Assembly: GCF_001194135.2 (NCBI RefSeq)
Contig: NC_068991.1
Coordinates: 34,348,761-34,387,952 of the forward strand
DNA: 39,192 bases
Source of the DNA: Octopus bimaculoides
Lineage: Eukaryota
Reading direction: 5' to 3'
Below the pieces are notes generated by a model. It saw nothing but the letters and a program-made list of their open reading frames with translations, was not told where the DNA came from and searched no databases. Below are positions 3,875 to 34,932 of this stretch, piece by piece (the first letter of the stretch is position 1; the number at the start of each line of letters is the position of its first letter). The translations under genes and the position numbers were made by a program.

Positions 3875-4022
3875 CAAGTAGCTGAGCAACAAGTACGCAA
3901 CCAAGAAGTTGGCATGATGACAGAATTAGTCAGAGATTTTTTAGATCCTGCTGATTTTTACAAAGCATTGCATAATATAGGCATAGAATACTTCTGTGGT
4001 GTTCCTGATTCTTTGTTAAAAG
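3875..4022 (+). CDS. ppd: Phosphonopyruvate decarboxylase-like gene, first coding exon visible in the window
   Basis: Acceptor ttttctttgtattttggTAG| at 3874 and donor AAG|GTAAGT at 4023 (phase 1). Open frame QVAEQQVRNQEVGMMTELVRDFLDPADFYKALHNIGIEYFCGVPDSLLK contains the F(C/T)GVPDSLLK motif of Ppd N-termini. Not in the ORF track. Confidence 0.93.
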
Positions 4023-4349
4023 GTAAGTATGAAATTATGCTTAAATATTGATGTCCAAAATAAATATTTATTTTGTATGTAGCTGTTTGTTTATGTGTAG
4101 TAAATTCTGTTGACATAACATTTTCTAGACAACATCTTGGAACTTGGATTACCAAGTATTACTAAATGCATCAATACTTATACAGAGGTCTTGTGTCATC
4201 TTGTGAACAAAGCTTAAGATTAGGGACAATGTATTTTGCCACTATGATATGGTTGTTCCATAAAGAACTATGTTACTACATTTTAACGCCCCTACTCACA
4301 ATATATAAACAGAGATGCAATAGACAGCCACTGATCTCATAAGGAGCAA

Positions 4350-4926
4350 AATAGCTAGTTCTAAACATCTCTAAATGAGATATATAAGTAGTAACAATAC
4401 TACACAGTAACATTTTTGCCACTATAACATGGCTGTTCTATAAAGAACTATGTTACTACATTTTAACCCCAAGAAAACATCTTTTCCAGCGAGTTAACAA
4501 TACACAAACTGTGAATAAGGGAGTGAACCACTCCCCTCCAGCTTGGCAAGACTAGTAAACCATGCTTTCTGGGTCTTTACCCTATGAGATCAGCAACTGT
4601 CTGCTGCTTCTATGTTTATATATTGTGAGTAGGAGTGAGTGACTGCCATCTCTAGCAGGCAGGTGTCCAGTACTGATGAAGGGTAAAGACCCAGAAACCA
4701 TGGTCTACTAGTCTTGCCCAGCTGGTGGGGAGTGGTTTGCTCCCTTACCCATGAAATATCGGACACAGTTTGTATGTCGTTAACCAGCTGGAATAGACAT
4801 TTTCCTGGGGTTAAAATGTAGTAACATAGTTCTTTATGGAACAGCCATGTTATAATGGCAAAAAAATGTTGCTGTCTAGTATTGTTACAACTTATATCTT
4901 GTTTAGAGATTTCAGAACTAGCTATT
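4350..4926. repeat. Long imperfect inverted repeat (fold-back or MITE-like), arms about 4350-4583 and 4679-4926
   Basis: Arm segments are reverse complements: aagaactatgttactacattttaacccc / ggggttaaaatgtagtaacatagttctt and ctgggtctttaccct / agggtaaagacccag. Confidence 0.9.
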
Positions 4927-5089
4927 AGGATTAATATATTCCTGAAATTCTTGGTTTCCAGTAGTATTTATCTATTTATTTATGCATTTCAGCCAAGTAG
5001 CTGTGGTCATGCTGGAGCACCACCGTGACTTTCCGTCTTTATGCTGTGCTCTCTTCACGTTCCTTGCATGGCTCTTCTCCTCCACCTGA

Positions 5090-5310
5090 TATAGTCCAAT
5101 CAAGATTTTTGATGGCACATCTGGTGTATAAGAGAATTTGATATCGCTGCCCTAAACTGTGTCTCATTTCGAGCCATTGGTTCATCTGGTATCATGGAGA
5201 GGAAAGTGTCGAGTTTTGTTTTGAAGACCTCTATATCCATGTCTTGCAGGTCTCTCAACTGTTTTGGTAGGGCATTAAAGAGCTGAGGTCCTCTGGACAT
5301 TTTCAGAAAT
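5090..5310 (-). mobile_element. 3' end fragment of a CR1-like LINE ORF2
   Basis: RGPQLFNALPKQLRDL...FKTKLDTFLSMIPDEP...AAISNSL is a typical CR1-group C-terminus. Confidence 0.75.
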
Positions 5311-5353
5311 AATCTACTGTCACATTTTTATTGCAAAAGAGTCATGTTCCAGT

Positions 5354-8194
5354 TTCTTAAAGTTATTTAGTTTAATATGAAGAGATTCTTATTTGAACAA
5401 AGCAATGATATTTAATGCAAGTATCGAAAAAGTATGGATATTGTTTATGCTACCAAGCTTTGAAAGTTGCAAAAATTTATATTATTATACACAGTATTGT
5501 GACTGATATAACTTCATTGATTGAGACTTTTCAATAACAAGTCAGATGTCAAAGATGAATAAACTTATTTATACATAAGAAAAACTTGAGATATTCAGAG
5601 AAATGCTGGGTGTGTGATTAGAAGTTATCCTGATTATATTATTTCATCACTTTTTGGAGTTGAAAAATACCTGTTCAATAACTGTAGTCATTTTGTCTTT
5701 AGATCTGCCCTCTGGAAGACTTCATTAACAAGAACATGACAAACAATCTTCTAGTTCCGCTAACATTTCTCAACCAAATAAGAAAAGAAGATGATCTTCA
5801 ATTAGGCACTGTCTTCTTTTATACTTGAAACTTTGCAAGTGAAGCTGTATAGCAACAATGAAAGCATTTACTGCACTTATGTCAATCATGTTGTAGAATA
5901 TAACCATAGGCCATCTTTGAGTCATTCTTTTGCAAGTGTATGTCCTTACCATCCTATCTTGAGTATCTACTCCTTTTGTTTTGTTGTAACATGTAATAAC
6001 TTCAGGTTTCTTTTCAGCATTTTTTGGATCAATTGAAGGCTGAGAGTGCATTGTACTCATAAGTGTGACTACATAATTTTTCTTGGGACAAAGAGATAAG
6101 ATCATAGAATTCTTTTGAAATCCAAATATTGTGCTGTTGATTTCTCTTTCTTTTTGATTTGTAAAAGCACTTGAAAGTTCAACTCTGTTCTTTCTAATTG
6201 TTCCAACTAAAGTAGTTTTCTTGCTAAGTAGCTTTTGAGCCAATCCTACACTTGTAAGAAAGTTATCACAAGTTATATTGTGACCAGTATTTTCAAGTTC
6301 TTTTATTAGGTCTTCAAATAACTCTTGAACCTTGATTTGTCTCTCTCCATTTAACTGGGTCTTTTCCAGTGTAGATTTGCTTTTTCCAGGCATAAGATGT
6401 TTCACTGTCGCATATTGCCCAAATTTTAATTCCATATTTCCCTGGTTTTGAAGGAATATATACCCGAAATGGGCAGCGCCCTCTGAATGAAACTAATTGT
6501 TCATCAACTGTCATGTATGAACTTGGAACATATCTATCTTGCAAATACTGATTCCACATTTCAAATACTTCTCTTGTGGGCTCCAATTTATCATCACCTC
6601 TCTTTTTTCTTCTTGCACTAGCATCATCAAAACGCAATACTTGTAAAATCTGTTGAAATCTTCCCTGGCTCATAATTTTGTTGAATATTTGGCGGTCGTC
6701 TTCTTGACTCCATTTTCATGTTTAGATTTATGAACACTTATAAGAATAGTCAGTCTAATAAATTTCTTTAGTTCAGAGTGATTAATTTCCTTCCGTTTAT
6801 CTTTGTAAACAACCTGACCTTCAAGAAGCACCTCAAGAAGATTCTGGTGCATAAAGATAGTAAAACATTTCAATGCTATCGCAAGACCTTTTAGCAAAAC
6901 AGGATGGTCCACATTCTTGGCGCACAATATTGCAAGATAAAGTTCTTACTGCTGCTTGAGTAAGAGGATCAGAATGTCAAACTTCTTGTCTGTCGCTGGA
7001 AACATATTGCTCATTCATAATTTGGTGGCTTGCAGATAATTGTTTTGAGTATCTTCATCATCTGATGACACAGAACCTAAACTGTCCAGCACACAATCAC
7101 TTTCACCATCATCTTCAGAGCAATAGAAGGAATCACTACTAACTTCTTCCCATTCTTCATCTAATTCCAATAACCTTTTTGATATTTGGTCTTCACTCAA
7201 GTTTTCATGTCTAAGCATATTGGAAAGCACAACTGAACTACATGAAACTTGATAGCAGACTAAAGGCAGATATTGCTCTCTCACATATATTGATACAATA
7301 TATTGTAAGAATTGTGTCATCACATAGAAATATTACACCACCCTATAATCTAGCAGATTGAAGGTGATGCAATACCGCACAAATTTGCAGGAATATTTTC
7401 ATAATTTTTCCTATTTTATCTCAAATTCAGCAAATAAATTGAATACAATTTTATCTATTTTATATATGATAAATATCTAGGAAAATAATATTTGAAACTG
7501 ATTTTATTCTGTTTAGAATGACAAGAGTATTGTCTGAATTTAATTCGAGGGTCCAATGGACCCAAACAGTAATTAAGCAGTAAATAAAGTGAAATTTCAT
7601 AGCTTTTATAAACATATGGAAAATTTCCCGTTTGACAAATAAAAGAGATTCAAGAAAAAATAAGTCACAAGAAATCAACAGAATCAAATAATATCTGGTC
7701 ACCACATGCCAGTCAAATCTCACTGCTACAATATACAGAATATCAGCAAATAGCCAGCAGGCTTATTAAAAATTAATTATTAGTGATGATTTCCAGTAGA
7801 ATGAAAGGGTGTGATATGGGAGTTCCAGCACCCTTGACAGATGATTCTCATTTGCTACAATCTATGAGTGTGCTTTTATGCACCAAACACCTATATGAGA
7901 GAACCTCCCAAGGCTAATAATGCAGTATTCAGTGTTCTAACATGCTAAGTTGAATATAAAAATTACCTTTTGGTATTAATGCTACTTCTGTCACTAATGA
8001 TTAATATTTAAAAAGTCTAAATTAACTTAAACACTGAACATGAGCTCTTAAAGTTATTTAGTTTAACATGAAAAGATTCTTATTTGAACAAGACAATGTA
8101 ATTTAATGTGAGTATTGAAAAAATACAGATATTGTTTATGCTACCAAGCTTTGAGAGTTGTAAAAATTTATATTATCAGACACAGTATTGTGAC
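5354..8194 (+). repeat. Pair of about 150-bp diverged direct repeats (about 5354-5512 and 8046-8194)
   Basis: Shared segments include cttaaagttatttagtttaa, gattcttatttgaacaa, gatattgtttatgctaccaagctttga and acacagtattgtgac. Confidence 0.85.
5700..7581 (-). mobile_element. piggyBac (PGBD4-like) DNA transposon, frameshifted transposase
   Basis: ORFs 7015-7323, 6670-6927, 6314-6673 and 5770-6435 give an acidic N-terminus, MTVDEQLVSFRGRCPFRVYIPSKPGKYGIKIW, NITCDNFLTS and YNKTKG-VDTQD (DDD triad). Subterminal palindrome GGGTCCAATGGACCC at 7549-7563. Confidence 0.93.
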
Positions 8195-8393
8195 CAACAT
8201 TTAATTTCACCATCCCACTACAAAACCATCAGCACCTCCATTTGGCCAACACATATATTTAGCACATATAGTTAGCATATATTTCTCCACTACCTGCACA
8301 TTATTATGGTCATTGACATAATCTCTCTCTCTCTCACACACACACACACATGCCTACACACATTTTTATATGTTTATTATTTTATTCTTTTAG

Positions 8394-8524
8394 ACTTTTG
8401 TGCATATATTGCTGAAACATCACCGAAGGATAGACATATCATTACAGCCAATGAGGGCAGTGCAGTAGCTTTAGCAACAGGCTACCATCTTGCAACTGGA
8501 AAATCAAGTTTGGTTTACCTCCAG
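8394..8524 (+). CDS. ppd: Phosphonopyruvate decarboxylase-like gene, second visible exon
   Basis: Acceptor ttttattctttTAG| and donor CAG|GTAAGA (phase 0). The split codon G|AC gives Asp, then FCAYIAETSPKDRHIITANEGSAVALATGYHLATGKSSLVYLQ, including the ANEG motif with the ThDP-activating Glu. Confidence 0.95.
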
Positions 8525-8999
8525 GTAAGATAACCTATTAGCATTGATATGAGCTTTGAGAACATAAATAGATGAAGTGGGATTTTACATTAGATATATC
8601 AATACAATTGTTGAGAACAAAATTACCATTGTAACTAGAAGATATAGTCTAATTTATATTCACAAACCAGACACTTGCTGCCACTTTGTAACTGCTCAAC
8701 TAAACTTCTCTCTTTTTTTTCTTCTTTGCCTGGTGAGCTTCAGCAAAAGTTGTAGTCTTTCAGTGCAAAAGCATCAAGCTGCAACATGTTTCAGCTGTTG
8801 GGATTGATAAACCACCACTGTAAATGTATTGCAAATATAAAGTGCATAATATATAGAATTAAACATCAACAATGTTCATGCTGTGCACATGTAGGCATTT
8901 TAATTGGCTGTATAAGTGTTCTAAGTTGCAGGTCACCAATGAAAAATCATTAATATCTGGTTATTAGTAGGATGTAAGGACCATAAAGAAATCATTGTT

Positions 9000-9850
9000 G
9001 CATAGTTCAACAATTCATTCATTTGCCACAAAGATTATCCAACATAATGGCCTGATAGTTTGCAACAGCAAAAGATGAAATGTTTTTTTAAATGTGTATA
9101 ACTGTGACGGGCAAATGCATTAGTTTATTAGTTGACCTTGCTGTAAACATAATAAAAATGGTGAAGATGATAGTGTAGGTAAGCCTTATTTCTTTGAGTT
9201 GAAGAAAAGTATTTAGCACTAGTTTGATGGATCCTATAATGCTATCTGATGACTGCAACATAGCACTAGATTGCATATTTCTATGTGAGAAAGAGATGAA
9301 GTTTGAACAATTACTTATATGATATTGTTTGCAGATGAGAGTATTTGATGAGCATTAAAAGAGATTAATCTAGAGAGGAAGCTATTTGAGAGACATATAA
9401 GAAAACCCAGGCTGACCTATTTTCCAGCTGCAACCAAGATGATCTCTGTCTGGAGCTAAAAGTCATGAGTTTATTTATATAATCTCAAAAAAAGGTTCTT
9501 TTTGTATTTTCACATGGTAATGAAAATGGTTCTTTTGATGTCTGCTGACATTTGTCATATCCACTAGCTATCATAAAAATTACCAGATATGGTAATATTA
9601 ATGAAATGTAATTCCAAATTCAGACAGAAGTGCTGTAAGATCAAATCTTGGAAGTGGTCTACTACAATGTAATGAGATGTGTTGGTTCTAAACAATAAAA
9701 ACTTGGATTAGGTTGATAACATGTCTGTCAAAGATTTCTTATTTTATATTTCCACATAAAGTATGAAGGTCTTGAAATACTGGGATTGTAAAATTCTTCA
9801 TTTATAGCCTACAATAGCATCGTTTGATTTCCAATACATAGTAGTCATGG
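9000..9850 (+). mobile_element. Possible very old mariner-like transposase remnant
   Basis: Only faint resemblance to the mariner LGWEVLPHPPYSPDLAPSDF block near 9760-9830. No intact motif. Confidence 0.25.
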
Positions 9851-10494
9851 GAGTGAGAGTCAACAAAATTATTTACATGTCTGCCATCACATAATTTTGT
9901 CACTTTTTGTAAGAAAATGATGTGTAACATTGATCATATATGAAATTGCTTGTTGATCCATATTTTGTCAATAAGGTAGTCATTACATTTTCTAACTGTC
10001 TCCATGATAATCATGTCTTCATATCCAGCAATAAAAAGACTTCTTTCATATTTTGAAAATTATTTTGATAAGAAAGTTGCAGGCCTTCCAACTTGAGGCA
10101 GCATGAAACCTAGAGCAGATTCTGATTATATTTCTAGATTTTTGTAGTCATTTTTAGCAACTGTTTGTTCATAGCAGTAGCACTGTTTGGTGTTTCCTGT
10201 TGTTTACTAACTTCAATGTAAATTTCACTTCTGTAACTATCTTGTAACTATTTCAGCATTTTTGGATGCTTTTGCATAATTGATAGTTTATGTAACAGCT
10301 CAATTAAGTGAGAGATTGTTTGATTGTCTAGAGCTTATAGAAATGAGTTTACAAATGAATACACAAAATACCCAAGCAACTCATTCTTCAGCTTCAAAAG
10401 TACAGTCTCATGGAAATGTCATAGAATTGTCATGTACTGACTTATAAATTCATTTTGATCCTAGTGATAAGTAGATATCTAACAATTTATATAC

Positions 10495-10550
10495 TCTTTT
10501 GCTCTTTTACTTGTTTCAGTCATTTGACTGCGGCCATGCTGGAGCACTGC
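10495..10550 (-). mobile_element. 3' tail fragment of SINE family 1
   Basis: ctcttttacttgtttcagtcatttgactgcggccatgctggagcac. Similar stubs at about 4985-5025 and 18358-18405. Confidence 0.85.
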
Positions 10551-11059
10551 CAATCTTTACAAAAATAGAACCAAATAGGTCAGGGATTCATTATAGTCTA
10601 TATAATGTGCAATGAAATTAAAAACTTACATTATAGAGTAATTTGATTTTTATCAAAATTTGTACTTTGTTGGCATCTCTAATAATTATTGGGGAGTGTG
10701 GAAGAAGAATTATTGAATACAGTCTACCATTACTACCATCTGTTATTATTGAAAAATTTCCATCAAATTGTCCAGTTTCACAATGGTTTTTTTATTGACT
10801 ATTATTCAGTTGAATAAATTTTTGTAAGAGCTATACTCAACTAAATAACAAAGTCTGGAGCATCAAAATGGTAGTCATTTTAAATGGTACTGATCAAATG
10901 ACTGTCTTGTTGAGTTAATTGATTTAGTAATTAAATTATTAGATTTAGGACTGGTAGATAATTCCATAATAGTTTTCTTTTCTGTTTGTATGTGATATAG
11001 TTACCTTGTTGAGTTGTTTGTTCAGATCACAGTAAAGATGAACTTCTGAAGATGTCTTA

Positions 11060-14000
11060 ATTTATAATGGAATATAAAACACTTCAAGAAGCCAGCCAAC
11101 CAACTCATTACTTACCAGTCTGGTAAACCCACAAGTCAGAGAGATTACATTCTAACCAGGAAAAGGGACAGAGGAGTGATTGTAAATGCCAAAACCTTTT
11201 CTGACTAAGAATGCTTTATGCAACATTAGTAGCAAGTGACTTCAGAGTTAGAACCAGGTAGACACAGAAATGAACTATGACATAGAGAAGGAAAAGTCAG
11301 AAACTGAAAGATTCTGCAGTTTGGAACAGATTTTGAGAAATTCTAATTATGCACATAACTGTAGGGAGGAAGATTGAGATGCCTGAGGATTTCTTAGAAA
11401 TAACCTGTTTAGGGCTACACATCAGACATGGCTGGAGCAAAGCCAAAACAAAAGAAACATGGTGGTGGAATGATACATCTGATAGGGCAGTAAAGACTAA
11501 AAGAATGACTTCGAAAATCTGGAAGAAAGTGTCTAGTATGGAGCATTACCAAATGGCCAGAAGGGTAGCTAGGTGGCAAATATGCTTAGCTAAGGTTGAA
11601 ACGATTTGCACATATCTTGCAGCATGAGGATCAGAGGCAAGATGTTCAGGATCAAGAGACAGTGTGTAATAGAGAACCAAGCTCTCATTGGTGACAAATG
11701 TTTTCAGAATAATGAACATGCACTCACCATTGATATAGAAGACAAGAAAATAGTGTGGAAGTGCTTTTATGAGTGGCTGCTGAATGTTGAGAATGTAGAG
11801 GACAAAGAGGGGCTACTTCATACTGACACTATAGAAGTACCAACAATTAAAGACATAAAGAGAGAGACAACTGCAGGTCCATAAAGGATAGTTGCTGAGA
11901 TGCTCAAAATATCCAGTGAAGTACAGTATATTATTATACACCCTGATAGTTAATCAAGTTATACAAGGAGTCATACCCAATGACTAGCATAGCAATAGCA
12001 TTATAAACTGTTACAAAGATGAAGGAGATGCCCTAGAGAGAAGCGACTATAAAGGAATGAAATTACTGAATCAAGTTATGAAAATCACAGAGAGGGTTGT
12101 TGGTGCAACTGATATGTGACAGGGTAGACTTAAATAAGATGCAGTTTGGTTTCGTATCCAGAAGAATAAACCATTAATTTTGGGATTCATTGACTTAAAG
12201 AAAGTGTTTGACAGGGTACCACTTACAGAAATTTGGTTGATACTAAGGAAACTTGGCATTGACAAATGGCTTGTGAGGACTGTACAAGTCATATATACAG
12301 ATGCAGTAAGTAAAATGAGAGTCAACAAAAACTTCAGTGATGAATTTAGAATGTAAGTTGGAATCCATCAAGGTTCAGTCCTCATCCCACTCCTATTTAT
12401 CATACATCAAGGTTCAGTTCTCAGCCCACTCCTATTCAACATAGTCCTACAGGTCATCACAGAGGAGTTTAAGATTGGCTATCCTTGAGAACTCCTATAT
12501 GCTGATGATCTATTTCTCATAGCTTAATCTATAGAGGAATTAGAGAAGAAATTTCAGGCATGGAAGCTGAACCTAGAATTGAGATGACATAAGGTAAACC
12601 TAGCAAAGACAAAGTAGGAAAGAAGACAGGATCTTATCTTCTGGGAAATGGCCTTGCTCAATGTGCTGAAAAGGAGTAGGTAAAAACTTTTTATATTGTG
12701 TCAAATGTAAACAATGAACACCCAGAGGACATAAGTTTTGTTCTTAGTACATACTGATGTAGTATGTACAATGAGCACACCGGAAATTGAATGTTAAACA
12801 AAGATTTTTTTCTCAGAATAAAGGGCAAATTGTATGAAGCTTGTGTTAGAACTGCAATGTTTCATGGTTGTGAGACAGACTTTGAATACAGGGTATTTGA
12901 GAAATGAAGCTAACATATTCATTTAGATGTGCAATGTGAGTGTGAATGAAAGAATTAGTACAAAACTGCTGAGAGAAGAACTGGGCATAAGAGGAATCAA
13001 ATTTAGTGTATAAGAAAGAAGACTGTGCTGGTCTGGATATGTGATGAGGACAGCTGTATAAAGAAGTGCTGGTCACTTAATGTGGACGGAGCTTACTGAA
13101 GAGGGAGGCCTAAGAAGACAATGGATGAAGTGGTGAAGGCTAACTTCAGGATCCTGACCCTCAAGAAGGAGATGACAAAAGACTGGAATGACTGGTGACA
13201 TGAGGTTCTCAAGAAGACCTGCTTACCTCATTGAAACTGAGTTCTGAAAACACTGTGTGTGTACGTGTATGTATTTTTATAAATATACACAAATAAGCCC
13301 TTTACTCAATCTCCCTCTGAAATCACCAACACTACCTCTCACTACAGCTCTCCCTTCATACCACTTATTTTTCGTACTACCCAGAAGCATTTCACATGTT
13401 ATTCATTTTTCCATCTTTTAATACTGTTCTTTCCATCCATACTTTACATTGATCACATGCCTCCACTGGACCCACAAATTATCTTCCTCATCCCAACATA
13501 TTTTTCTCACTCTTCATTCACTATGCCTGACTCTCTTTCTCTCTGACACTTCTACAATCTTCCCAACCACATGTTATCTCTCTCTCAACCTTCTCTTATT
13601 TACTACTGTATTGTATCATCTGTAGCCCTTTACTTCTCCCAAAATATGCATCATTAGTCATACCCCTCCTCCCTTATCCATCATTCATAACATCTACCCT
13701 TCAATTTTACCCAATATTCATAGTTCTTGTCTTCCCCTCACCATTTTCTCAATTTCTCACTCTCCCATATACTCTAGCAAGTCAAACCCACGTTTACGTC
13801 TAGTTCTTCTGTCCTCATTCATTTCTACCCTCCTTGTATCTTGAGGAGCACCTGGACACCTCACCACCACTATTTTATCTCTTTCCAGCACCACCAAACC
13901 ACTCCCACCTTTGCTTCTTAAATGTGAAAAGCCATGTAGCTCCTCTATTGCAAGAAACCTGCTATGTCATGTTCACTCATACTTAAACCATTTATCTAGC

Positions 14001-14245
14001 ATAAAGCTGCCTTCCTCTTGAGATTTGTAGTGTTGCAAACTGCATAGCTACCTTACCATACCATAGCTGGTGCCATGGAAAATACACCCAGTGCATGCTG
14101 TAAAGAGATTGGCATTAAGAAGAGCATCTAACCATAGAAATCATGCCAAAGTAGACACTAGAGCACAGTGCAGTCCTTGGATATATTGGATTCTATCTAA
14201 TTATTCAACTCATGCTAGCGTGGAACATGGATTAAATGACAACAA
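11060..14245 (+). mobile_element. 5'-truncated, decayed RTE-clade LINE (endonuclease C-terminus, RT, long pyrimidine-rich 3' region)
   Basis: Reads KETWWWND...AVK.KR, FIDLKKVFDRVP, HQGSVLSPLLFNIVL, ELLYADDL, KWPCSMC and GRPKKT. The 3' terminal segment at about 14070-14245 ends in a aac/atg-type short tandem tail. Confidence 0.88.
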
Positions 14246-14618
14246 CAATGATTATGGTGAGGATGTGTGAAGAAGAATTTTCACTTGTTTCACAGACAAT
14301 TTATCGGCTACTTAGTGTGACCAGTATAGTCTATTCTACTAAGAGGAAGAGAGCAACAGGACCATTGACAGGACTCAAACCTTGTATCTATTGTTTGTCA
14401 GATACTTATGTTACTGATAAGATAGATTACTGAACGTCAAATATTTCCTTTTTTCTGAAACTGGCTATTGTATAAGGTTTTGGATGTAGCAAGATGTTCC
14501 ATTTTGGTTGTTTCTTTGCAATGAGAAAAAAAATTCTCTATTTTCATTAATTTGTAATTAATTCATATTTATGGTGTTAATATTTTCTGATTTTCTTGAA
14601 ATATTGAAATTTTTATTT

Positions 14619-14806
14619 ACTCTTTCACTTGTTTCAGTCATTTGACTGTGGCCATGCTGGAGCACCGCCTTTAGTCAAGCAATTCAACCCCAGGACTTAA
14701 TCTTTGTAAGCCTAGTACTTATTCTATCGGTCTCTTTTGCCGAACCGCTAAGTTACGGGGACGTAAACACACCAGCATTGGTTGTCAAGCGATGTTNNNN
14801 NNNNNN

Positions 14807-14838
<32 letters not shown>

Positions 14839-14990
14839 ACGGGCTTCTTTCAGTTTCCGTCTACCAAATCCACTCACAAGGCTTTGGTCGGCCTGAGGTT
14901 ATAGTAGAAAACACTTGCCCAAGGTGCCACACAGTGGGACTGAACCCGGAATCATGTGGTTCGTAAGCAAGCTACTTACCACACAGCCAT
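14619..14990 (-). mobile_element. Near full-length tRNA-derived SINE family 1 (resembles the octopus OK-type SINE)
   Basis: On the minus strand: Pol III-like head TGGCTGTGTGGTAAG...GGTTCAGTCCC, internal (TA)n, and tail ...GACTGAAACAAGTGAAAGAG. Matches 20896-21280. Confidence 0.9.
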
Positions 14991-15029
14991 AGGTATAAAA
15001 GGTCATATCATCAAGAAAAAATCCCAGAA

Positions 15030-18000: not shown

Positions 18001-18235
18001 TGCACCTTTGTGTTCAAGAAGTTAGGCAGCTTCTGCAGTACCACTGGTGCAATGATTCTGAGGTGCATCAAGTGAGTTTGACACATGAGAGATGCAAGAA
18101 ATTGTCACTGTCAGAACACTACCTTTCCTTCTTCCACCTGTTGCGCAGATTACAGATGTGACATTGTTCAACCTCCTGCATTGTGGCAGGCTGGGGAGTT
18201 GATATACATGGGAAAGGCTTGAGCATAACTAGAGC
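15030..18235 (-). mobile_element. Decayed CRE-like non-LTR retrotransposon (RT plus restriction-like endonuclease)
   Basis: Minus strand reads LLKLDIKN...SI.QD, DVQQDDPFG and WYMDD (16810-16823). C-terminal DGKCPD.MT..P...KSLIWD...AAC.AEDRKLNKY...VAVEALSAFGP has the PD..D endonuclease pattern. Interrupted by the SINE at 16329-16579. Confidence 0.8.
16329..16579 (-). mobile_element. tRNA-derived SINE of the family-2 group, with a different 3' half
   Basis: Minus-strand head TGGCTTAGTGGTTAGGGTGTTGG...GTTTTGATTCC and central TGTGTTCTTGAGTAAAAC...AGTTCACTCAGCTG, shared with 27795 and 34591. Confidence 0.8.
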
Positions 18236-18256
18236 CGTGTCTATATATATATGTTC

Positions 18257-18300
<44 letters not shown>

Positions 18301-19388
18301 CTGGAGGAGGCAAAGGCATATTCAAAGCCATGACTATATATTTCCTTAAAATATATATACTCTTTTACTTGTTTCAGTCATTTGACTGTGGCCGTGCTGA
18401 ATTGCCTCCTTAACTATGTTCATATACATATATANNNNNNNNNNNNNNNNNNNNNNNNNNNNNNNNNNNNNNNNNNNNNNNNNNNNNNNNNNNNNNNNNN
18501 NNNNNNNNNNNNNNNNNNNNNNNNNNNNNNNNNNNNNNNNNNNNNNNNNNNNNNNNNNNNNNNNNNNNNNNNNNNNNNNNNNNNNNNNNNNNNNNNNNNN
18601 NNNNNNNNNNNNNNNNNNNNNNNNNNNNNNNNNNNNNNNNNNNNNNNNNNNNNNNNNNNNNNNNNNNNNNNNNNNNNNNNNNNNNNNNNNNNNNNNNNNN
18701 NNNNNNNNNNNNNNNNNNNNNNNNNNNNNNNNNNNNNNNNNNNNNNNNNNNNNNNNNNNNNNNNNNNNNNNNNNNNNNNNNNNNNNNNNNNNNNNNNNNN
18801 NNNNNNNNNNNNNNNNNNNNNNNNNNNNNNNNNNNNNNNNNNNNNNNNNNNNNNNNNNNNNNNNNNNNNNNNNNNNNNNNNNNNNNNNNNNNNNNNNNNN
18901 NNNNNNNNNNNNNNNNNNNNNNNNNNNNNNNNNNNNNNNNNNNNNNNNNNNNNNNNNNNNNNNNNNNNNNNNNNNNNNNNNNNNNNNNNNNNNNNNNNNN
19001 NNNNNNNNNNNNNNNNNNNNNNNNNNNNNNNNNNNNNNNNNNNNNNNNNNNNNNNNNNNNNNNNNNNNNNNNNNNNNNNNNNNNNNNNNNNNNNNNNNNN
19101 NNNNNNNNNNNNNNNNNNNNNNNNNNNNNNNNNNNNNNNNNNNNNNNNNNNNNNNNNNNNNNNNNNNNNNNNNNNNNNNNNNNNNNNNNNNNNNNNNNNN
19201 NNNNNNNNNNNNNNNNNNNNNNNNNNNNNNNNNNNNNNNNNNNNNNNNNNNNNNNNNNNNNNNNNNNNNNNNNNNNNNNNNNNNNNNNNNNNNNNNNNNN
19301 NNNNNNNNNNNNNNNNNNNNNNNNNNNNNNNNNNNNNNNNNNNNNNNNNNNNNNNNNNNNNNNNNNNNNNNNNNNNNNNNNNNNNNNN

Positions 19389-19449
<61 letters not shown>

Positions 19450-19749
19450 AGCAGCTATACACACATATACATAATATATCAGCTCGCATATACTTAAATA
19501 TATAATTATTACCAACCTATACTTACATACTTATAACCTCTACACTCTACACATATACATCATTTCCACTTAATTGCACTCATTTGTGTACTCAGTAAGC
19601 AAGAGTATGCATACATGTATTTATCTATGTGCGCAATAACAGCATTAAACACATGTATATTCACACATGTATGTATACATTTACATACACACAAACATAC
19701 ACTTCTAATACATTTATATCCATCCCCACATGTGCATACATATTTATAT

Positions 19750-20085
19750 AAGCATAAGAGATTAACAATTCAGGGACAAACCAAGATAAACTAGAATAAC
19801 AAATTTAAAACAAAGGAAATAAATAAAGTGAAAAAAGTAAAAATATAAAAACATAGAATATAAAAATATTAAAAAATAAAAACATAATAAGGGCATAAGA
19901 TATAAAGGATAAAAAAACAACAACAATTTGAGATATATGTATAAGATAAATCATAAAATATGATAAATGTATTAAGAATGTGATAAGAATATAAAAAAAT
20001 ATCAGAAGATATAAAAAGTATAAGGATTATGTATAAGATGTAGAATATAAAATACATAATATATAATCTATAATAATAAAATCAA
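19750..20085. repeat. A-rich, C-poor low-complexity tract
   Basis: Strongly skewed composition (aaaata, aagata units). No coding signal. Confidence 0.7.
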
Positions 20086-20569
20086 AATTCTGTCTGTTTG
20101 GGACCCCTGTATCTCAGTCTACATAGACATATTATACTTTTTTGGAATCAGGATAATCCCAGAATTGAAAATCTGCCCTTCATTTGGTTCTTGAACATCC
20201 AGCATTGGGTTCTGATTTAAAAGCATCTGGGTTGCTATTTCTAGCAGGTAAAGCTTGGCTGATTCATGCCATCTTGGTTGGCATTTGTCAGAGATCAAGG
20301 GAGAGATAAATGATATTCACTTTGTTAATTTTATGTCGAGATAAGAACTTTAGGACAAATTGGCAACAGTTGGAATTCAACTTGGGACTGGAACAATAGA
20401 ATGATTACATTACAAAATTAATGTAATCCTTAAAAAATTAATTCTCATCCTTCTTTAACCTCTGATCAAACACCGCTGCAGCATATAGTCATTATAGACA
20501 TATTATAGTCGTGCTATTTAGCTCTCTTTAGTTTTGGGCCAGAGGCCCAATTATCCCTTCATAGGCGCA

Positions 20570-20608
20570 AGCTTAAAAGTCTGCATGGAGTGCGGCTTTT
20601 AAGCTAGT
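20570..20608 (+). other. Palindrome ending in CTAG|T, possible Helitron 3' terminus
   Basis: AGCTTAAAAGT-CTGCA-tggag-TGCGG-CTTTTAAG-CTAG-T: a GC-rich hairpin 8 nt before CTAG|T. Confidence 0.45.
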
Positions 20609-20895
20609 ACAATATGAATATCAATATTATGTCAATATCATAAGTATATGAAAAAAGTATTTTGATTACTCACTGGCCAAATTTTGGTTGGAGGAGTCAA
20701 AAATAAGCAATTTTGTTTTGAAATTGGGATATTTTAAAATGTTGAATTCTTGTAATATATTCACCTGAACAAAACAGTTTTTTTCGCATGATGTAATAAT
20801 TCTATTCACCAGTATAAGAAAACATGTCTGAAACAGCTGTAGTGAATCACAATCCACCTGCTGTTATTTGTTTATGTGTGTGTGTTTAATAAATA

Positions 20896-21280
20896 GGCAT
20901 AGAAGTGGCTGTGTGGTAAGAATCTTGCTTCCCAACCACATGGTTCTGTGTTCAGTCCCACTGCATGACACCTTGGGCAAGTGTCTTCTACTACAGTCAT
21001 GAGCCAACCAAAGTCTTGTGCATAGTAACAGAAGAAGCCCATCATATATATATATATGTATGTATATACTTGTGTGTCTGTGTTTATCCCTCCACCATCG
21101 CCTGACAACTGATGTTGGTGTGTTTACATCCCTGTAACTTAATAGTTCTGCAAAAGAGACCAATAGAATAAGTACTAGGCTTAAAAAGAATAAGTCCTGG
21201 GGTCGATTTGTTTGACTAAAGGCAGTGCTCCAGCATGGCTTCAGTCAGATGACTGAAACAAGTAAAAGAATAAAAGAATA
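20896..21280 (+). mobile_element. Full-length tRNA-derived SINE family 1
   Basis: Head GTGGCTGTGTGGTAAG...GTTCAGTCCCAC, internal (TA)n/(TG)n, and tail GACTGAAACAAGTAAAAGAATAAAAGAATA. Confidence 0.9.
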
Positions 21281-22028
21281 AATGTTCTGTTAATTTGGTT
21301 TGAGTGCAATAAATATGTTGTGTTATGCACATAAAATATATGAATTAAAATAAACTAAAATGAAAAAAATTAAATTAAACATTTTGAATTGGAAATGAAA
21401 TTAAAGAAACATACAAGGTTGTAAATAAACATTAATTTTCTGTTTGTCTGTCTTTTTTACAAAAATGATTAATAAGAAACAAAAAGATAATTAAAATGAA
21501 AGAAAAAAAGAAAATTTAATGTAACAAAAGGCAGTTCATGGAAATGGTTAAAATATTAAAAATTCACTGAAAAAGTTTCTGTTAAAAATTCTCACCTATT
21601 GTGTTTATTTTCTTTTTCGTAAGAAAGGACATTCAACAATGTAGCCTGTAGGAGGTGAATTTCTTGCTAAAAGAGTATGTGACATGGAATATTTGGAAAT
21701 TCTTTACTGAAGAAAATTCTCCAGAGTTATACGATAATATAAGGCAATTTTGTCTTGTTAAAAGAAACAGCACAATGTTTGTTGCTTTGATTATAAAATG
21801 GATTTAATGCATGGGAGTGGATGAGACAAAGCTTTTTGTTAGAAAATGCAGTTCAAATTAAAGTTCTGTCACAAATATGAAACCAGTGTATGTCAGAATA
21901 AAGAAATAAAATGGAGCTGTGGAAACATTTTTATACAAGTATCAAGACTTGATTTGGGAAGAAAAGATAGTTCATGCTCTTCTGGCATACCCAGAGCCAT
22001 GCTTATATATGTGCTTAAAATATATATG

Positions 22029-22077
<49 letters not shown>

Positions 22078-22087
22078 NNNNNNNNNN

Positions 22088-23225
22088 TGACTATAAAAAC
22101 AAATTGTGCATAATTTAGTTTACAGCTGTTAGTTCAGTGTCAATTTTAACACGGAGTGCAAAAACAAACATTTTCTCTACATTTTGCTTTTTTATTTCCG
22201 TAATGGCAAGAAAGCTGCTGAGGCTCACAAAGAGATATGTGAAGTTTATGGTCTTGATTGCTTAAGAGAATGCACATGTCAGAAATGGTTTTAAAAATTC
22301 TGTTCTGGAGATTTTACGCTCAAAGATGACCAACATTCTGGTCGACCTACTGAAGTTGATGATGACCAAATCAAAGCCATAATTTAATTTGATTGTCATA
22401 TAACTGTGTGAGAGATTTCAGAGAGGTTAAATATATCACACACAACAATTGAAAATCACTTAAAATGCCTTGGACTCGTTAAAAACCACAATATTTGGGT
22501 TCCACATGAATTGAAAGAGATTCATTTAACACAGTGAATCAATATTTGCGATATGCCTCTCAAACGTAATGAAATCGACCTTTTTTGAAATTAATTATCA
22601 CTGGTGATAAAAAATGGATTGTCTACAATAACATCAATCAAAATCGATTATGGTCCAAGTGTAATGAACCAGCACAAACCACACTGAAAGCTGAATGGTA
22701 TCAAAGAAACATCATGGTGGGATTACAAAGGTGTTGTGTATTTTGAGGTGCTTCCAAGGAACCAAGCAAACAATTCAGATGTTTACTGTCATCAACTAAT
22801 GAAACTGGAGGAAGCAATGAAAGTAAAACAACCAGAATTGCAAATCATAAAGGAATTGTGTTTCACCATGACAGCATTAGACCACACATGTCTTTATTAA
22901 CTCGTGAAAAATTATTGGAGCTTGGTTGGGACACATCCACCATATAGTCCTGACCTTGCACTATCAGATTTTGAAGTTTGCAAAATTCTTTGAATGGTAA
23001 AACTTACAATAATGATGATGACCTGAAATTGCACTTGCTTCAGTTTTGGCTGATAAGGACTAGAAGTTTTGTGAGTGTAGAATTGTGAAGTTGCCAGAAA
23101 GATGGCAAAAGGTCATCGAACAAAATGGAAAATATACAATTGATTAAAGTTCATTCTTTGTATGAAAAAAAAAAAAACTTTTATTTCACACTAAAAAACC
23201 GAAATTACTTTCTTGCCAACCCTAT
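22088..23225 (+). mobile_element. Mariner (Hsmar1/SETMAR-like DD34D) transposon, inactive
   Basis: Reads AAEAHKEICEVYG, SGRPTEVDDD, WVPHELKE, ITGDKKWIVYNN, FHHDSIRPH and HPPYSPDLA. Right terminal inverted repeat (TIR) AACCGAAATTACTTTCTTGCCAACCC followed by TA. The left TIR is not visible, possibly lost at the gap. Confidence 0.93.
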
Positions 23226-24332
23226 ACACACACACACACACACACACACACATGACAGAAATAAATAGACATTCAATAAAACATTGTTTTATGTTTATTC
23301 TAAGTTGCAGTGGTTTATATTTTTCATTAATTGACGCTTTTATGTTTCAGGTTCTATATGTGGCTGTTTAATCAAGCCATGTACAAAAGAAGCCTTGGAA
23401 CTGTCTGAATTTCAAAGAGGCCATATTGTCAGTCAATCTGAAGGTGGACATAGCATAAAATTGCAGAAAACCTTGGGATCCCACTTTCTAGAGTGACTGC
23501 GCAATTCACCAGAGACAGGAAGGAGTCTACATCACCTTGCCCAGGTTGACCAGGGCTCTCTGACAGGACCTTTCTCTTTGTTAAGAGAAGTGTGTAGGAT
23601 AATTCTTGTTGCAAGGCCTCTGACATAGCAGAGCACGTTGATGTCAGTCCCAGAACAGCTGTCAGGTATCTCCACAAACTTGGTTACTATGGCAGAGCAG
23701 CAAGAAGGAAGCCATTTCTTTGACCAGCCAATATCAAGTGGAGAAAAGATTGGGCCAGTGAGATGGTGGAGAGGTCACTAGCATTTTGGGACATTGTCAA
23801 ATTCTCCAATGAGTCCAGATTTGCTGTATTTTCTAACAGTGGTTGAGTGTGGGCCTGGAGACTGTGATTAAGAGTTTGACGTGAAAAGATTGCAACCAAC
23901 AATGAAACATGGCAGCTATTCTGTGATGGTCTGGAGAGCAATAGTCAATCAAAGCTGGTGGAGTGTGAGGGAAACATAAACTCAGATAGATGTGTGTCCA
24001 TATTGTAGAAAGGATTCCTTTCAATCTTCTCCAGTGGTGAAATGATTAAAGAAGACTCTTTATTTATGGAAGATGGGGCTCCTGGCATTAAAAAGCTTCC
24101 ATGGCCAAGCCAGTCACCAGATATGAACCCTATTGAACACCTCTGGGGCACTTCATAAAAAGAACAAGAAAGTATCTTCAAAGCCAGATCTTTTGAGATT
24201 ACTGGATGAAACTTGGCAAGAAATTCTTCAAGAGAAAATTCATCATCCGATCATTAACATGCCTAATAGGGTCCTTGTATTGAAAAATGCAAGGGGAATG
24301 TCTACTAAATATTAAATATTCACATTATAACA

Positions 24333-24656
24333 TTATTTACATTATCTACATTTGACGGATATTCGTCCTCATCTTGTTTGTTGTTAACACAACGTTTCGG
24401 CTGATATACCCTCCAGCCTTCGTCAGGTGTCTTGGGGAAATTTCGAACCTGGGTTCTCATTCCTATCGATGTTACTATTATTATTNNNNNNNNNNATTTC
24501 GAACCTGGGTTCTCATTCCTATCGATGTTACTATTATTATTATTATTATATTATTATTATTATTATTATTAATCAGGTCGCTGCCGTGAATCGAACTCGG
24601 AACCTTGGGGTTAGTAGCCCGCGCTCTTAACCACTACGCCATATGCCCGTGAACTG
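24333..24656 (-). mobile_element. tRNA-headed SINE family 3 with a 16-bp TSD
   Basis: A box TGGCGTAGTGG (24631-24641) and B box GTTCGATTC (24588-24596), followed by (AAT)n. TATTCACATTATAACA is duplicated at 24317-24332 and 24657-24672. Confidence 0.92.
24386..24431 (-). ncRNA. Minimal type I hammerhead ribozyme motif inside the SINE
   Basis: Minus strand GACAC-CUGACGA-A-GGCUG-gagggtatat-CAGCC-GAAA-CG-UU-GUGUU: 5-bp stem I, CUGANGA and GAAA cores, 5-bp stem II, minimal palindromic (ACGU) stem III, GUU cleavage triplet. Confidence 0.7.
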
Positions 24657-25369
24657 TATTCACATTATAACAATTAATAATTTGAATGTATAATTTCAGA
24701 TTTAAATGAATTTTAACTATTATAACTGTGTCTATTTACTTCTGTTGTGTCTGTGTGTATATATATATGTTTAAAAATTGTTCAGTTAATTTGGTTTGCG
24801 GGTAGCAATCCTAGGATGTTAAGTGTTACATGCACAAAGTATATGAATTAAAATGAACTGATATTCAACTTCTTTTAGTTTACATCATGCTCACAAATGT
24901 CAGCTTTTTGACTGCAACTACCTTTCCAGGTGGGAAAACACTTGATATACTTTGTGTGAAAATATAATACAATAATAGAATGAATCACTCAGAGATGACC
25001 AGCCTCTCCTACTGACACTAAGTGGCTGGCAATTACCTGCGAAACAATTAAGATACTGTGTAGAAATAAAATAAACAGTAGAAAAAAATACATATAGTAC
25101 CTAGCTTGAAAAATGTAAGAAGTGTTGTTGTAATCAGTATCATGGTCACCCAACAAACAACTGGAATCAGGCTCAAGTACTGTGGCCTGCTTTCCTTTTT
25201 CTGTCTCAAGTTGATGCTTATGATATCTAACACTACATCTAACATTTTATCATCAACTGTTATTGAAGTATAGATATAAAATGAGAATGAAAATTATAGT
25301 AAAACTTTTTAAAAATGTGAATAATATTGAATTTTTACATTGATATTATTGTTTTTATTTCATGTCTAG

Positions 25370-25529
25370 AATTCTGGTCTTGGAAATATAGTAAACCCTT
25401 TGATGTCACTAGCTTCAACTAGTGTCTACAGTATTCCAATGTTACTTCTAGTTGGATGGCGAGGTGAACCTGGCAAACGAGATGAACCACAGCATCTAGT
25501 TCAAGGACACGCTACACCAGGCCTTTTAG
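25370..25529 (+). CDS. ppd: Phosphonopyruvate decarboxylase-like gene, third visible exon
   Basis: Acceptor gtttttatttcatgtcTAG| (phase 0). Encodes [53 protein letters not shown], completing the QNSGLGN motif and containing GWRGEPG..DEPQH. Probable donor G|GTTTGC at 25530 is weak, phase 1. Confidence 0.93.
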
Positions 25530-25589
25530 GTTTGCTATACTCAAATGGTTTTTTACTCTAATATCATTAAAAAATATTGTGATTTAATT

Positions 25590-27222: not shown

Positions 27223-27602
27223 CAAATAAGAAAATGGAGAGGATATAAAGTCGACAGACATCAGCCAGTAAACATGTAAGTATGTCTATTTATTCAATTG
27301 TAAAGGATGAATACGCACACATGTATGAGTTATACAGATTAGCGAGTGGAAAAGCTGGTAACTGCATAGACAAGGGTGTGAATACATATAAGTATATAGA
27401 AACAAATGAGCAAATGAGCAAAAATATAAATGGGTGTGCACGTACCTGCACACCCATTTATATTTTTGCTCATTTGTTTCTATATACATGTATATATTAT
27501 ACATGTGTGTGTATTCATCCTTTACAATTGAATAAATAGACATACTTACATATTTACTGGCTGATGTCTATCGACTTTATATCCTCTCCATTTTCTTATT
27601 TG
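27223..27602. repeat. Near-perfect 380-bp fold-back palindrome (MITE-like)
   Basis: Outer arms 27223-27326 / 27499-27602 and inner arms 27392-27440 / 27447-27487 around loop CGTACC. The ORF track shows MSIYSIVKDEY on both strands. Confidence 0.95.
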
Positions 27603-29303: not shown

Positions 29304-29340
29304 AAAATCATGGTTGTCCTTGCATATAGGCATGTCCCCT

Positions 29341-34930: not shown

Positions 34931-34932
34931 TG

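What the first reader, a model, noticed from the sequence alone, without database searches (positions are those of the whole stretch)
3875..25529. Spliced, intron-rich phosphonopyruvate decarboxylase gene: C-P (phosphonate) biosynthesis encoded in an animal genome
Seen: three exons of 148, 131 and 160 nt, separated by introns of 4,371 and 16,845 nt, join in phases 1 and 0 into [146 protein letters not shown]. There are no stops, whereas every TE ORF nearby is broken. Known: GVPDS, ANEG, QNSGLGN and RGEPG..DEPQH are hallmarks of Ppd/AepY. Ppd decarboxylates phosphonopyruvate, pulling the unfavourable PEP mutase reaction towards phosphonoacetaldehyde and then 2-aminoethylphosphonate (AEP). Molluscs make ceramide-AEP phosphonolipids, and vertebrates lack this pathway. 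Inference: this is the host's own functional ppd gene, part of a pathway mostly studied in microbial operons (aepX/aepY/aepZ of Bacteroides fragilis). The ORF track recovers only the middle exon.
Basis: partly seen in the sequence, partly recalled or inferred. Interest (0 to 1): 0.92.

Follow-up and report, generated by a model that had tools for sequence, protein, structure and literature searches.

The report
Octopus phosphonopyruvate decarboxylase gene, front part
Three cleanly spliced exons in this octopus DNA encode the front third of phosphonopyruvate decarboxylase, the animal's own enzyme for making the carbon-phosphorus head group of its phosphonolipids. The gene is already annotated in octopus and in dozens of other invertebrates, so it is real but ordinary.

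Summary
Exons 3875-4022, 8394-8524 and 25370-25529 have AG/GT borders and join into a stop-free 146-aa peptide. All four N gaps lie inside the second intron. A gapless Octopus vulgaris chromosome is collinear across them, so exon order and frame are safe.

The peptide is the N-terminal ThDP (PYR) domain of phosphonopyruvate decarboxylase. It scores 171.5 bits on positions 1-111 of TIGR03297, against 72.9 bits for sulfopyruvate decarboxylase.

It is the host's gene. Intron positions and phases are shared with a clam, a stick insect and Hydra. The exons differ from O. vulgaris at 1.4% of bases, against 5.5% in flanking DNA.

Only part of the gene is here. The exons for the remaining ~250 residues, which hold the cofactor-binding domain, lie beyond the window.

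It is not new. GenBank already names the O. vulgaris orthologue "phosphonopyruvate decarboxylase-like", and many molluscs, corals and insects carry the same annotation. A 2013 coral paper described an intron-bearing ppd gene and the AEP pathway, and mollusc PEP mutase was characterised in 1998.

Interest is low.

The parts
3875..4022 (+). Coding exon, exon 2 by homology. It encodes QVAEQQVRNQEVG-MMTELVRDFLDPADFYKALHNIGIEYFCGVPDSLLK plus the first base of Asp. The acceptor AG is at 3873-3874, inside an in-frame TAG. The donor is GTAAGT at 4023. The ATG ATG at 3914 is the start used by the O. vulgaris model.
   Evidence: The acceptor position directly before Q-(V/Y/I)-x-(E/D)-Q is shared with Bacillus rossius and Mercenaria. 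In Hydra it lies within about one codon. The exon is identical in length and splice sites in O. vulgaris.
4023..8393 (+). Intron, 4,371 nt, phase 1 (SLLK|DF). It contains a decayed piggyBac-type transposase on the minus strand (5770-6673, split by a frameshift).
   Evidence: Pfam DDE_Tnp_1_7 matches at E = 2e-31 and 7e-31. The same intron position and phase occur in Mercenaria, and the same position occurs in B. rossius. Hydra lacks this intron.
8394..8524 (+). Coding exon (exon 3): (D)FCAYIAETSPKDRHIITANEGSAVALATGYHLATGKSSLVYLQ. It contains the ANEG glutamate of the PYR domain.
8525..25369 (+). Intron, nominal 16,845 nt, phase 0 (YLQ|NSG). It contains all four N gaps of the finding, so its length is approximate.
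   Evidence: It is collinear with the gapless O. vulgaris intron of 15,257 nt. Position and phase are shared with Mercenaria, B. rossius and Hydra.
25370..25529 (+). Coding exon (exon 4): [53 protein letters not shown] plus G. The donor is GTTTGC, phase 1.
   Evidence: The donor position PG(L/I/M)L|(A/N), phase 1, is shared with Mercenaria, B. rossius and Hydra.
25530..39192 (+). Start of the next intron, at least 13.6 kb and reaching the window end. No further Ppd exon was detected. It is full of transposon remains: integrase 29785-30459(-), reverse transcriptase plus PHD 37525-38802(-), and a foldback element 27223-27602.
   Evidence: tblastn with seven full-length or near-full-length animal Ppds found nothing past residue ~136. 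Pfam matches are and repeats.

Best explanation
The window holds exons 2-4 of an octopus nuclear gene for phosphonopyruvate decarboxylase (Ppd, EC 4.1.1.82). The species is a congener of O. vulgaris.

Shown: the three exons splice at GT-AG borders into the N-terminal pyrimidine-binding (PYR) ThDP domain of a Ppd orthologue. The gene structure is the ancestral metazoan one. The coding sequence has been under purifying selection since the split from O. vulgaris.

Inferred, on three points:
1. The full gene has an upstream exon that encodes a leader of about 37-45 residues. The leader is basic and poor in acidic residues, like a mitochondrial presequence.
2. About four downstream exons encode the PP domain with its Mg-ThDP motif. 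They lie outside this window, because cephalopod introns run to tens of kb.
3. The enzyme decarboxylates phosphonopyruvate made by PEP mutase to phosphonoacetaldehyde. That step pulls the unfavourable mutase equilibrium forward and feeds 2-aminoethylphosphonate into the ceramide-AEP lipids that octopus tissue contains.
For: Identity:
- TIGR03297 (Ppyr-DeCO2ase equivalog) scores 171.5 bits, E = 2.5e-50, over profile positions 1-111. ComD scores 72.9 bits and acetolactate synthases 27 bits or less.
- Pfam gives TPP_enzyme_N.
- The best solved relative is a 'putative phosphonopyruvate decarboxylase alpha subunit', 9iz3.
- The best protein hit is 98% identical: 'phosphonopyruvate decarboxylase-like [Octopus vulgaris]'.
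- Full-length animal orthologues, 71-77% identical to the window peptide over 131 columns, score 452-479 bits on TIGR03297 against a cut-off of 312.5.

Host origin:
- Three intron positions with their phases (SLLK|DF phase 1, YLQ|NSG phase 0, PGLL|A phase 1), plus the acceptor before QVxEQ, are shared with Mercenaria, Bacillus rossius and/or Hydra.
- Transposon remains lie inside the introns.
- The locus is collinear with O. vulgaris chromosome OX597824.1.
- The sequence groups with animal and holozoan proteins, not bacterial ones.

Selection: 6 of 439 exon bases differ from O. vulgaris (4 synonymous, 2 not), against 5.5% substitutions in 22.6 kb of collinear non-coding DNA. The binomial P is 8e-6. 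All six splice sites are identical.

Partial gene:
- In full-length animal proteins the 146-aa peptide aligns from about residue 37-45.
- Mercenaria has four more exons after PGLL.
- The cuttlefish gene model spans more than 107 kb.

Leader: in 39 full-length eukaryotic Ppds the leader averages 38 residues. Its first 20 residues hold 3.3 R/K and 0.18 D/E on average, and 33 of the 39 have no acidic residue there.

Context:
- CAEP lipids occur in O. vulgaris (PMC12335516).
- A Ppd transcript is listed for O. maya (PMC6522055).
- PEP mutase and Ppd are placed in mitochondrion-related organelles of protists (bioRxiv 10.64898/2026.09.23.753574).
Against: - About two thirds of the coding sequence, including the Mg-ThDP-binding PP domain, was not found in the window. 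It was also not found in the 10 kb beyond the O. vulgaris model. An intact gene is therefore not demonstrated.
- The only octopus protein model on record (181 aa) ends in a mariner-derived exon and has no PP domain.
- No octopus protein with the C-terminal half appeared among the best 120 hits of a C-terminal profile search.
- No exon-1 candidate was convincing.
- The selection test rests on only six substitutions.
- No transcript reads, enzyme assay or localisation predictor were available.
Confidence: 0.88

Rival explanations
1. The octopus gene is a truncated relic or a PYR-domain-only gene. Only the N-terminal exons survive. In O. vulgaris they are capped by an exonised mariner fragment. 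The product would be inactive, or would work only as an 'alpha-subunit-like' piece.
For: No PP-domain exon lies in 13.6 kb downstream, nor in L001. The only octopus model is 181 aa and ends in a mariner-derived exon. Split Ppd alpha subunits do exist in prokaryotes (9iz3).
Against: The exons are about four times more conserved than flanking DNA, changes are mostly synonymous, and the splice sites are intact, including the phase-1 donor at 25529 that demands a following exon. The mariner insertion is absent at the orthologous site in this window, so that terminal exon is specific to O. vulgaris and looks like an annotation artefact. The cuttlefish model continues into downstream exons and spans more than 107 kb, so long introns explain the absence. 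Octopus makes CAEP lipids.
Confidence: 0.08
2. The peptide belongs to a different ThDP decarboxylase family, such as sulfopyruvate decarboxylase ComDE, acetolactate synthase or 2-hydroxyacyl-CoA lyase. Several UniRef names for orthologues say '2-hydroxyacyl-CoA lyase 2'.
For: UniRef labels some animal orthologues '2-hydroxyacyl-CoA lyase 2'. ComD and ALS models give weak hits.
Against: TIGR03297 scores 171.5 bits, ComD 72.9 and ALS 27 or less. Full-length orthologues pass the Ppd equivalog cut-off by about 140 bits or more and fall below the ComD, ComE and PRK06163 cut-offs. The coral study separated Ppd from the 2-hydroxyacyl-CoA lyase clade (PMC3640398).
Confidence: 0.02
3. The sequence is bacterial, either contamination or a recent horizontal transfer, and not an ancestral animal gene.
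For: Ppd is best known from bacterial operons. The bdelloid-rotifer study classed its Ppd transcript as foreign (PMC3499245). Bacterial proteins are still 59-67% identical.
Against: Spliceosomal GT-AG introns of 4-17 kb carry animal transposons. Intron positions and phases are shared across Cnidaria, Insecta and Mollusca. The locus sits on a 100-Mb O. vulgaris chromosome. The eukaryote-type leader and the QVxEQxxRN module are absent from bacterial proteins.
Confidence: 0.01

Closest known systems
'Phosphonopyruvate decarboxylase-like' [Octopus vulgaris], protein P0001, on chromosome OX597824.1
   Same: It is the orthologue. It is 98% identical over the 133 residues from MMTELV. It has the same three exons with identical splice sites and a collinear locus.
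   Different: That model starts at the internal ATG, so it omits the conserved QVAEQQVRNQEVG. It ends in a 48-aa exon taken from a mariner/Mos1 element (HTH_48, Transposase_1). That element is not present at the orthologous site in this window.
Animal Ppd orthologues (RefSeq 'phosphonopyruvate decarboxylase(-like)'): Mercenaria, Dreissena, Patella, Haliotis, Acropora, Montipora, Hydra, Periplaneta, Schistocerca, Priapulus and others. Also the Acropora digitifera ppd gene with 6 introns (Shoguchi et al. 2013, PMC3640398).
   Same: The named full-length orthologues compared are 60-79% identical over the PYR domain, the divergent gastropods and the partly aligned Actinostola lowest. Most share the N-terminal module QVxEQxxRNxExG-TELVRDF; gastropod proteins lack it. 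Intron positions and phases match in the three species examined.
   Different: Those models are complete, at 435-443 aa with leader and PP domain. Only the middle-front part of the octopus gene is visible here, and its introns are far longer (4-17 kb against 0.3-1.4 kb between the corresponding exons in the clam).
Bacterial Ppd: AepY of Bacteroides fragilis, Fom2 and BcpC types (NCBIfam TIGR03297)
   Same: It is the same enzyme family. The window peptide matches the family motifs GVPDSLLK, ANEG, QNSG(L)GN and GWRGEPG..DEPQH from profile position 1.
   Different: Bacterial genes are intronless, sit in operons next to PEP mutase, and lack both the leader and the 22-residue QVxEQ...TELVRDF extension.
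Sulfopyruvate decarboxylase ComD/ComE (TIGR03845, TIGR03846) and split 'Ppd alpha subunit' proteins (PDB 9iz3)
   Same: These are the nearest sister family, with the same PYR-domain fold and motifs.
   Different: The score is much lower (72.9 against 171.5 bits). They are two-subunit enzymes, whereas animal Ppds are single chains.

Membership tests
Phosphonopyruvate decarboxylase (NCBIfam TIGR03297, equivalog) | The whole-protein score reaches the curated cut-off of 312.5 bits | tested here: inconclusive
   The window peptide scores 171.5 bits, but it covers only profile positions 1-111 of 360. Full-length animal orthologues score 452-479 bits. The cuttlefish partial model scores 247 bits on positions 1-164.
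Phosphonopyruvate decarboxylase (NCBIfam TIGR03297, equivalog) | It scores better on Ppd than on sister ThDP families (ComD/ComE, acetolactate synthase, benzoylformate decarboxylase) | tested here: met
   171.5 bits against 72.9 (ComD) and 27 or less (ALS and others). The orthologues show the same ranking.
ThDP-dependent decarboxylases | PYR-domain glutamate that activates the cofactor (established knowledge of ThDP enzymes) | tested here: met
   The Glu in ...HIITANEGSAVALATGY... (exon 8394-8524) lies inside the Pfam TPP_enzyme_N match. The ANEG tetrapeptide recurs in most animal homologues read.
ThDP-dependent decarboxylases | PP domain with the GDG-X(24-27)-N(N) Mg-ThDP-binding motif | not testable with these tools
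   No exon past PGLL lies in the window or in L001. Orthologues carry CLDGDG...NNG(A)HDS (sequences). The downstream part of the octopus chromosome could not be fetched.
Phosphonopyruvate decarboxylase | It catalyses phosphonopyruvate -> phosphonoacetaldehyde + CO2 | not testable with these tools
   This needs an enzyme assay. As far as these searches showed, no animal Ppd has been assayed.
AEP biosynthetic pathway (PEP mutase, Ppd, AEP transaminase) | The partner genes PEP mutase and AEP transaminase are present in the same genome | not tested
Indirect support: mollusc PEP mutase was characterised (Kim et al. 1998, cited in PMC3543383), and CAEP lipids occur in O. vulgaris.
Metazoan Ppd orthologue group | Shared intron positions and phases | tested here: met
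   Intron before QVxEQ: B. rossius, Mercenaria and approximately Hydra. SLLK|DF: Mercenaria (phase 1) and B. rossius (position; phase not computed). YLQ|NSG phase 0 and PGLL|A phase 1: Mercenaria, B. rossius and Hydra.
Metazoan Ppd orthologue group | N-terminal leader exon (presequence-like, about 38 aa) followed by the QVxEQxxRNxExG module | tested here: inconclusive
   The module is present at 3875-3913. No leader exon was identified in window 1-3874. In Mercenaria the leader exon lies 22 kb upstream.

The most novel reading that the evidence does not exclude
Animal Ppd, octopus included, may be imported into mitochondria. The import signal would be a leader encoded by a separate first exon. 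The enzyme also carries a eukaryote-specific N-terminal module (QVxEQxxRNxExG-TELVRDF) that bacterial enzymes lack. If so, the step after C-P bond formation, and perhaps the whole AEP pathway, would be mitochondrial in animals, as proposed for some protists' mitochondrion-related organelles. The current octopus and cuttlefish gene models would then all be truncated or chimeric because of introns of 5-20 kb and more.
Probability: 0.5. Interest if true: 0.3.

Novelty: already known. Interest (0 to 1): 0.14.

Why it matters
It matters little beyond curation. Animal-encoded phosphonate biosynthesis has been established biochemically since mollusc PEP mutase was isolated in 1998, and genomically since the 2013 coral study. 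The genes are now named routinely in invertebrate annotations.

The useful residue is practical. The O. vulgaris model on record is a chimera that ends in a mariner fragment and starts at an internal ATG. The cuttlefish model skips exons. No full-length cephalopod Ppd turned up in these searches. This window, together with the conserved intron map, shows how to repair those models.

The presequence-like leader on nearly all full-length animal Ppds hints at a mitochondrial site for the pathway. That is cheap to test.

Tried and rejected
- Downstream exons. I ran tblastn with the cuttlefish model and six full-length Ppds (named ones: bivalve, limpet, priapulid, annelid) against window 25530-39192 and against the O. 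vulgaris locus. Nothing beyond PGLL appeared; the only hits were chance matches with E above 0.5.
- Octopus C-terminal half elsewhere. A profile search with seven C-terminal halves listed its 120 best hits of 8,000 scored, none of them from Octopus. No other cephalopod full-length protein was in the retrieved set.
- Cuttlefish locus. It could not be fetched because the gene range is 107 kb.
- Exon 1. I scanned window 1-3874 and L001 1-9961 for ATG-started, phase-0, GT-ended ORFs with a basic composition. It gave only a transposon-derived peptide (633-707) and an unconvincing 29-aa ORF (3458-3544). Neither is claimed.
- Similarity between the cuttlefish model's N-terminus (KSFHFSVFQ) and window 3806-3835 (KTFHF*MFQ, with stops). 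I judged it either intron read-through in the cuttlefish model or chance in AT-rich sequence.
- Three look-ups for coral and orthopteran loci returned nothing.
- Rfam and tRNA scans of the whole window found nothing.
- The NJ tree on 131 columns is poorly resolved inside animals. I used it only to separate eukaryotic from bacterial sequences.

Full report
**Observation**

The three segments are exactly as described. Exon 3875-4022 is flanked by AG and GTAAGT. Exon 8394-8524 is flanked by AG and GTAAGA. Exon 25370-25529 is flanked by AG and GTTTGC. Intron lengths of 4,371 and 16,845 nt and phases 1 and 0 are correct. The third exon ends in phase 1 with a G. That matches the Ala that follows PGLL in homologues.

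**Assembly gaps**

The window has ten N runs. The four flagged ones all lie inside the second intron, and none is nearer than 875 nt to an exon. The orthologous O. vulgaris locus has no N (L001, chromosome OX597824.1:55,485,026-55,529,179, reverse strand). It is collinear with window 1376-30612 at 88-95% identity across every gap. It carries the same exons at L001 9962-10109, 15843-15973 and 31231-31390, with identical splice dinucleotides. The peptide is continuous against homologues at each junction, so no coding exon is hidden in a gap. Only the intron length is soft: the O. vulgaris introns are 5,733 and 15,257 nt.

**What the peptide is**

- NCBIfam gives TIGR03297 (phosphonopyruvate decarboxylase, equivalog) at 171.5 bits, E = 2.5e-50, on profile positions 1-111 of 360. 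Sulfopyruvate decarboxylase alpha scores 72.9 bits and acetolactate synthases 27 or less.
- Pfam gives TPP_enzyme_N.
- The closest solved chain is a "putative phosphonopyruvate decarboxylase alpha subunit", 9iz3.
- The best database protein is 98% identical: "phosphonopyruvate decarboxylase-like [Octopus vulgaris]".
- Full-length animal orthologues pass the TIGR03297 cut-off of 312.5 with 452-479 bits and fail the ComD and ComE cut-offs.

The family assignment is therefore secure for the part that is visible. The window is not O. vulgaris itself. Non-coding DNA differs from it by about 5.5% in substitutions, so the source is a congener.

**Whose gene it is**

I mapped the exon-intron structure of three orthologues from their genomic loci: the clam Mercenaria (L002), the stick insect Bacillus rossius (L003) and Hydra (L004).

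| Intron position | Phase | Shared with |
|---|---|---|
| YLQ\|NSG | 0 | Mercenaria, B. rossius, Hydra |
| PG(L/I/M)L\|(A/N) | 1 | Mercenaria, B. rossius, Hydra |
| SLLK\|DF | 1 (computed in Mercenaria) | Mercenaria, B. rossius; absent in Hydra |
| acceptor directly before Q(V/Y/I)x(E/D)Q | 0 (computed in Hydra) | Mercenaria, B. rossius; within about one codon in Hydra |

Shared spliceosomal intron positions across Cnidaria, Arthropoda and Mollusca make this an old, vertically inherited animal gene. They exclude bacterial contamination or recent transfer.

Other evidence points the same way. The introns hold animal transposon remains: a piggyBac-type DDE_Tnp_1_7 at 5770-6673(-), and further downstream an integrase fragment and an RT-PHD element. 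In an identity table and a rough NJ tree, the octopus sequences sit among animal and holozoan Ppds at 71-80% identity. Bacterial proteins are 59-67% identical.

**Is it under constraint?**

Against O. vulgaris the 439 exon bases differ at 6 sites, 4 synonymous and 2 not. The 22.6 kb of collinear non-coding alignment shows 5.5% substitutions. The binomial probability of 6 or fewer differences is 8e-6. All six splice sites are unchanged. The counts are small, but they argue against a dead relic.

1. *The 5' side.* An in-frame TAG (3872-3874) sits immediately before 3875, and no ATG occurs before 3914. Yet QVAEQQVRNQEVG is conserved in coral, insect, bivalve and cuttlefish proteins. In full-length animal Ppds the 146-aa peptide aligns from residue 37-45. 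In 39 full-length eukaryotic Ppds the preceding leader averages 38 residues. Its first 20 residues hold 3.3 R/K and 0.18 D/E on average, and 33 of 39 have none of the latter. This is the look of a mitochondrial presequence. That reading is an inference, because no predictor was run. It fits reports that place PEP mutase and Ppd in mitochondrion-related organelles of protists. I could not identify the leader exon in window 1-3874. In Mercenaria it lies 22 kb upstream.

2. *The 3' side.* tblastn with the cuttlefish model and six full-length Ppds found nothing beyond PGLL in window 25530-39192. It also found nothing in the 10 kb past the O. vulgaris model. Mercenaria has four more exons there. 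They encode the PP domain with CLDGDG...NN. The cuttlefish gene model spans more than 107 kb. The likeliest reason for the absence is simply a long intron that runs off the window.

**State of the existing annotation**

The O. vulgaris model (181 aa) starts at the internal ATG and ends in 48 residues from L001 33984-34151. That stretch lies inside a mariner/Mos1 element (HTH_48, Transposase_1). The element is absent from the orthologous site in this window. The exon is therefore lineage-specific and is probably an annotation artefact. The cuttlefish model also lacks an internal segment and the C-terminus. No full-length cephalopod Ppd was in the retrieved sets.

**Mechanism**

The steps below rest on established knowledge of the family, not on tests made here.
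1. PEP mutase makes phosphonopyruvate in an unfavourable equilibrium.
2. Ppd, with ThDP and Mg2+, decarboxylates it irreversibly to phosphonoacetaldehyde.
3. A transaminase then gives 2-aminoethylphosphonate.
4. In molluscs that compound ends up in ceramide-AEP.

O. vulgaris arm muscle contains 29 CAEP and 6 N-methyl-CAEP species (PMC12335516). The ThDP-activating glutamate (ANEG) is present in exon 8394-8524.

**Novelty**

None of substance. The evidence:
- The orthologue is already named in O. vulgaris.
- The same name is attached to proteins of bivalves, gastropods, corals, Hydra, insects, a priapulid and a barnacle. Orthologues under other or no names occur in a brachiopod, annelids, rotifers and holozoan protists.
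- Shoguchi et al. 2013 described an Acropora ppd gene with six introns, its Nematostella orthologue and the AEP pathway (PMC3640398).
- Velvet-worm PEPm, Ppd and AEPt transcripts were reported in 2023 (PMC10540779).
- An Octopus maya white-body transcriptome lists a Ppd transcript (PMC6522055).
- PEP mutase was isolated from the mollusc Mytilus edulis in 1998 (reference in PMC3543383).

**Verdict**

The identification is correct. The claims of completeness and novelty are overstated. This is an ordinary, known invertebrate gene seen in part. Interest is about 0.14.

Noticed in passing
L001 33174-34154 (O. vulgaris); the orthologous site in the window is about 27199-27216: The last exon of the O. 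vulgaris 'phosphonopyruvate decarboxylase-like' model (48 aa) comes from a mariner/Mos1-type transposon (HTH_48, Transposase_1). The element is inserted in O. vulgaris only and is absent from this window. The public model is therefore a chimera.
   Followed up: yes
window 3875-3913, and the N-termini of proteins P0230-P0292: Most full-length animal Ppds read here, though not the gastropod ones, carry a basic, acid-poor leader of about 38 aa. It is followed by a conserved module, QVxEQxxRNxExG-TELVRDF, that bacterial Ppds lack. The leader looks like a mitochondrial presequence. The function of the module is unknown.
   Followed up: partly
window 5770-6673 (-), possibly extending to 7323: A decayed piggyBac-type transposase (Pfam DDE_Tnp_1_7, two ORFs split by a frameshift) lies inside the first intron, antisense to the gene.
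   Followed up: partly
window 27223-27602: A foldback element of about 380 nt. It has 114-nt arms that are 95% complementary, plus nested inverted repeats, so both strands give near-identical ORFs. It is conserved at the orthologous place in O. vulgaris (L001 about 34239-34610). It is probably a MITE or foldback transposon.
   Followed up: partly
window 37833-38132 and 38226-38525: Two 300-nt direct copies, 100% identical, flank the N gap at 38173-38225 inside a reverse-transcriptase/PHD element. This looks like a gap-associated assembly duplication, not biology.
   Followed up: partly
window 29785-30925 (-): A fragment of a retroelement integrase core (Pfam rve, 32.3 bits, just under the gathering score). 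An adjacent unassigned ORF lies in the intron downstream of the third exon.
   Followed up: no
window 3806-3835: Just upstream of the acceptor, the frame reads KTFHF*MFQ. This resembles KSFHFSVFQ in the annotated N-terminus of the cuttlefish Ppd model. It suggests that the cuttlefish model reads through intron sequence, or it may be chance in AT-rich DNA.
   Followed up: no
proteins P0159, P0250, P0283, P0291, P0294 (gastropods): Gastropod Ppds are markedly more divergent (62-69% identical to the octopus peptide, no higher than some bacterial proteins). They lack the TELVRDF module. They form their own branch in the rough tree.
   Followed up: no
window 38-555, and the flanks of the gaps at 18435 and 22078: Long CA/TG-rich and TA-rich microsatellite tracts border several N gaps. 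They probably caused the assembly breaks.
   Followed up: no
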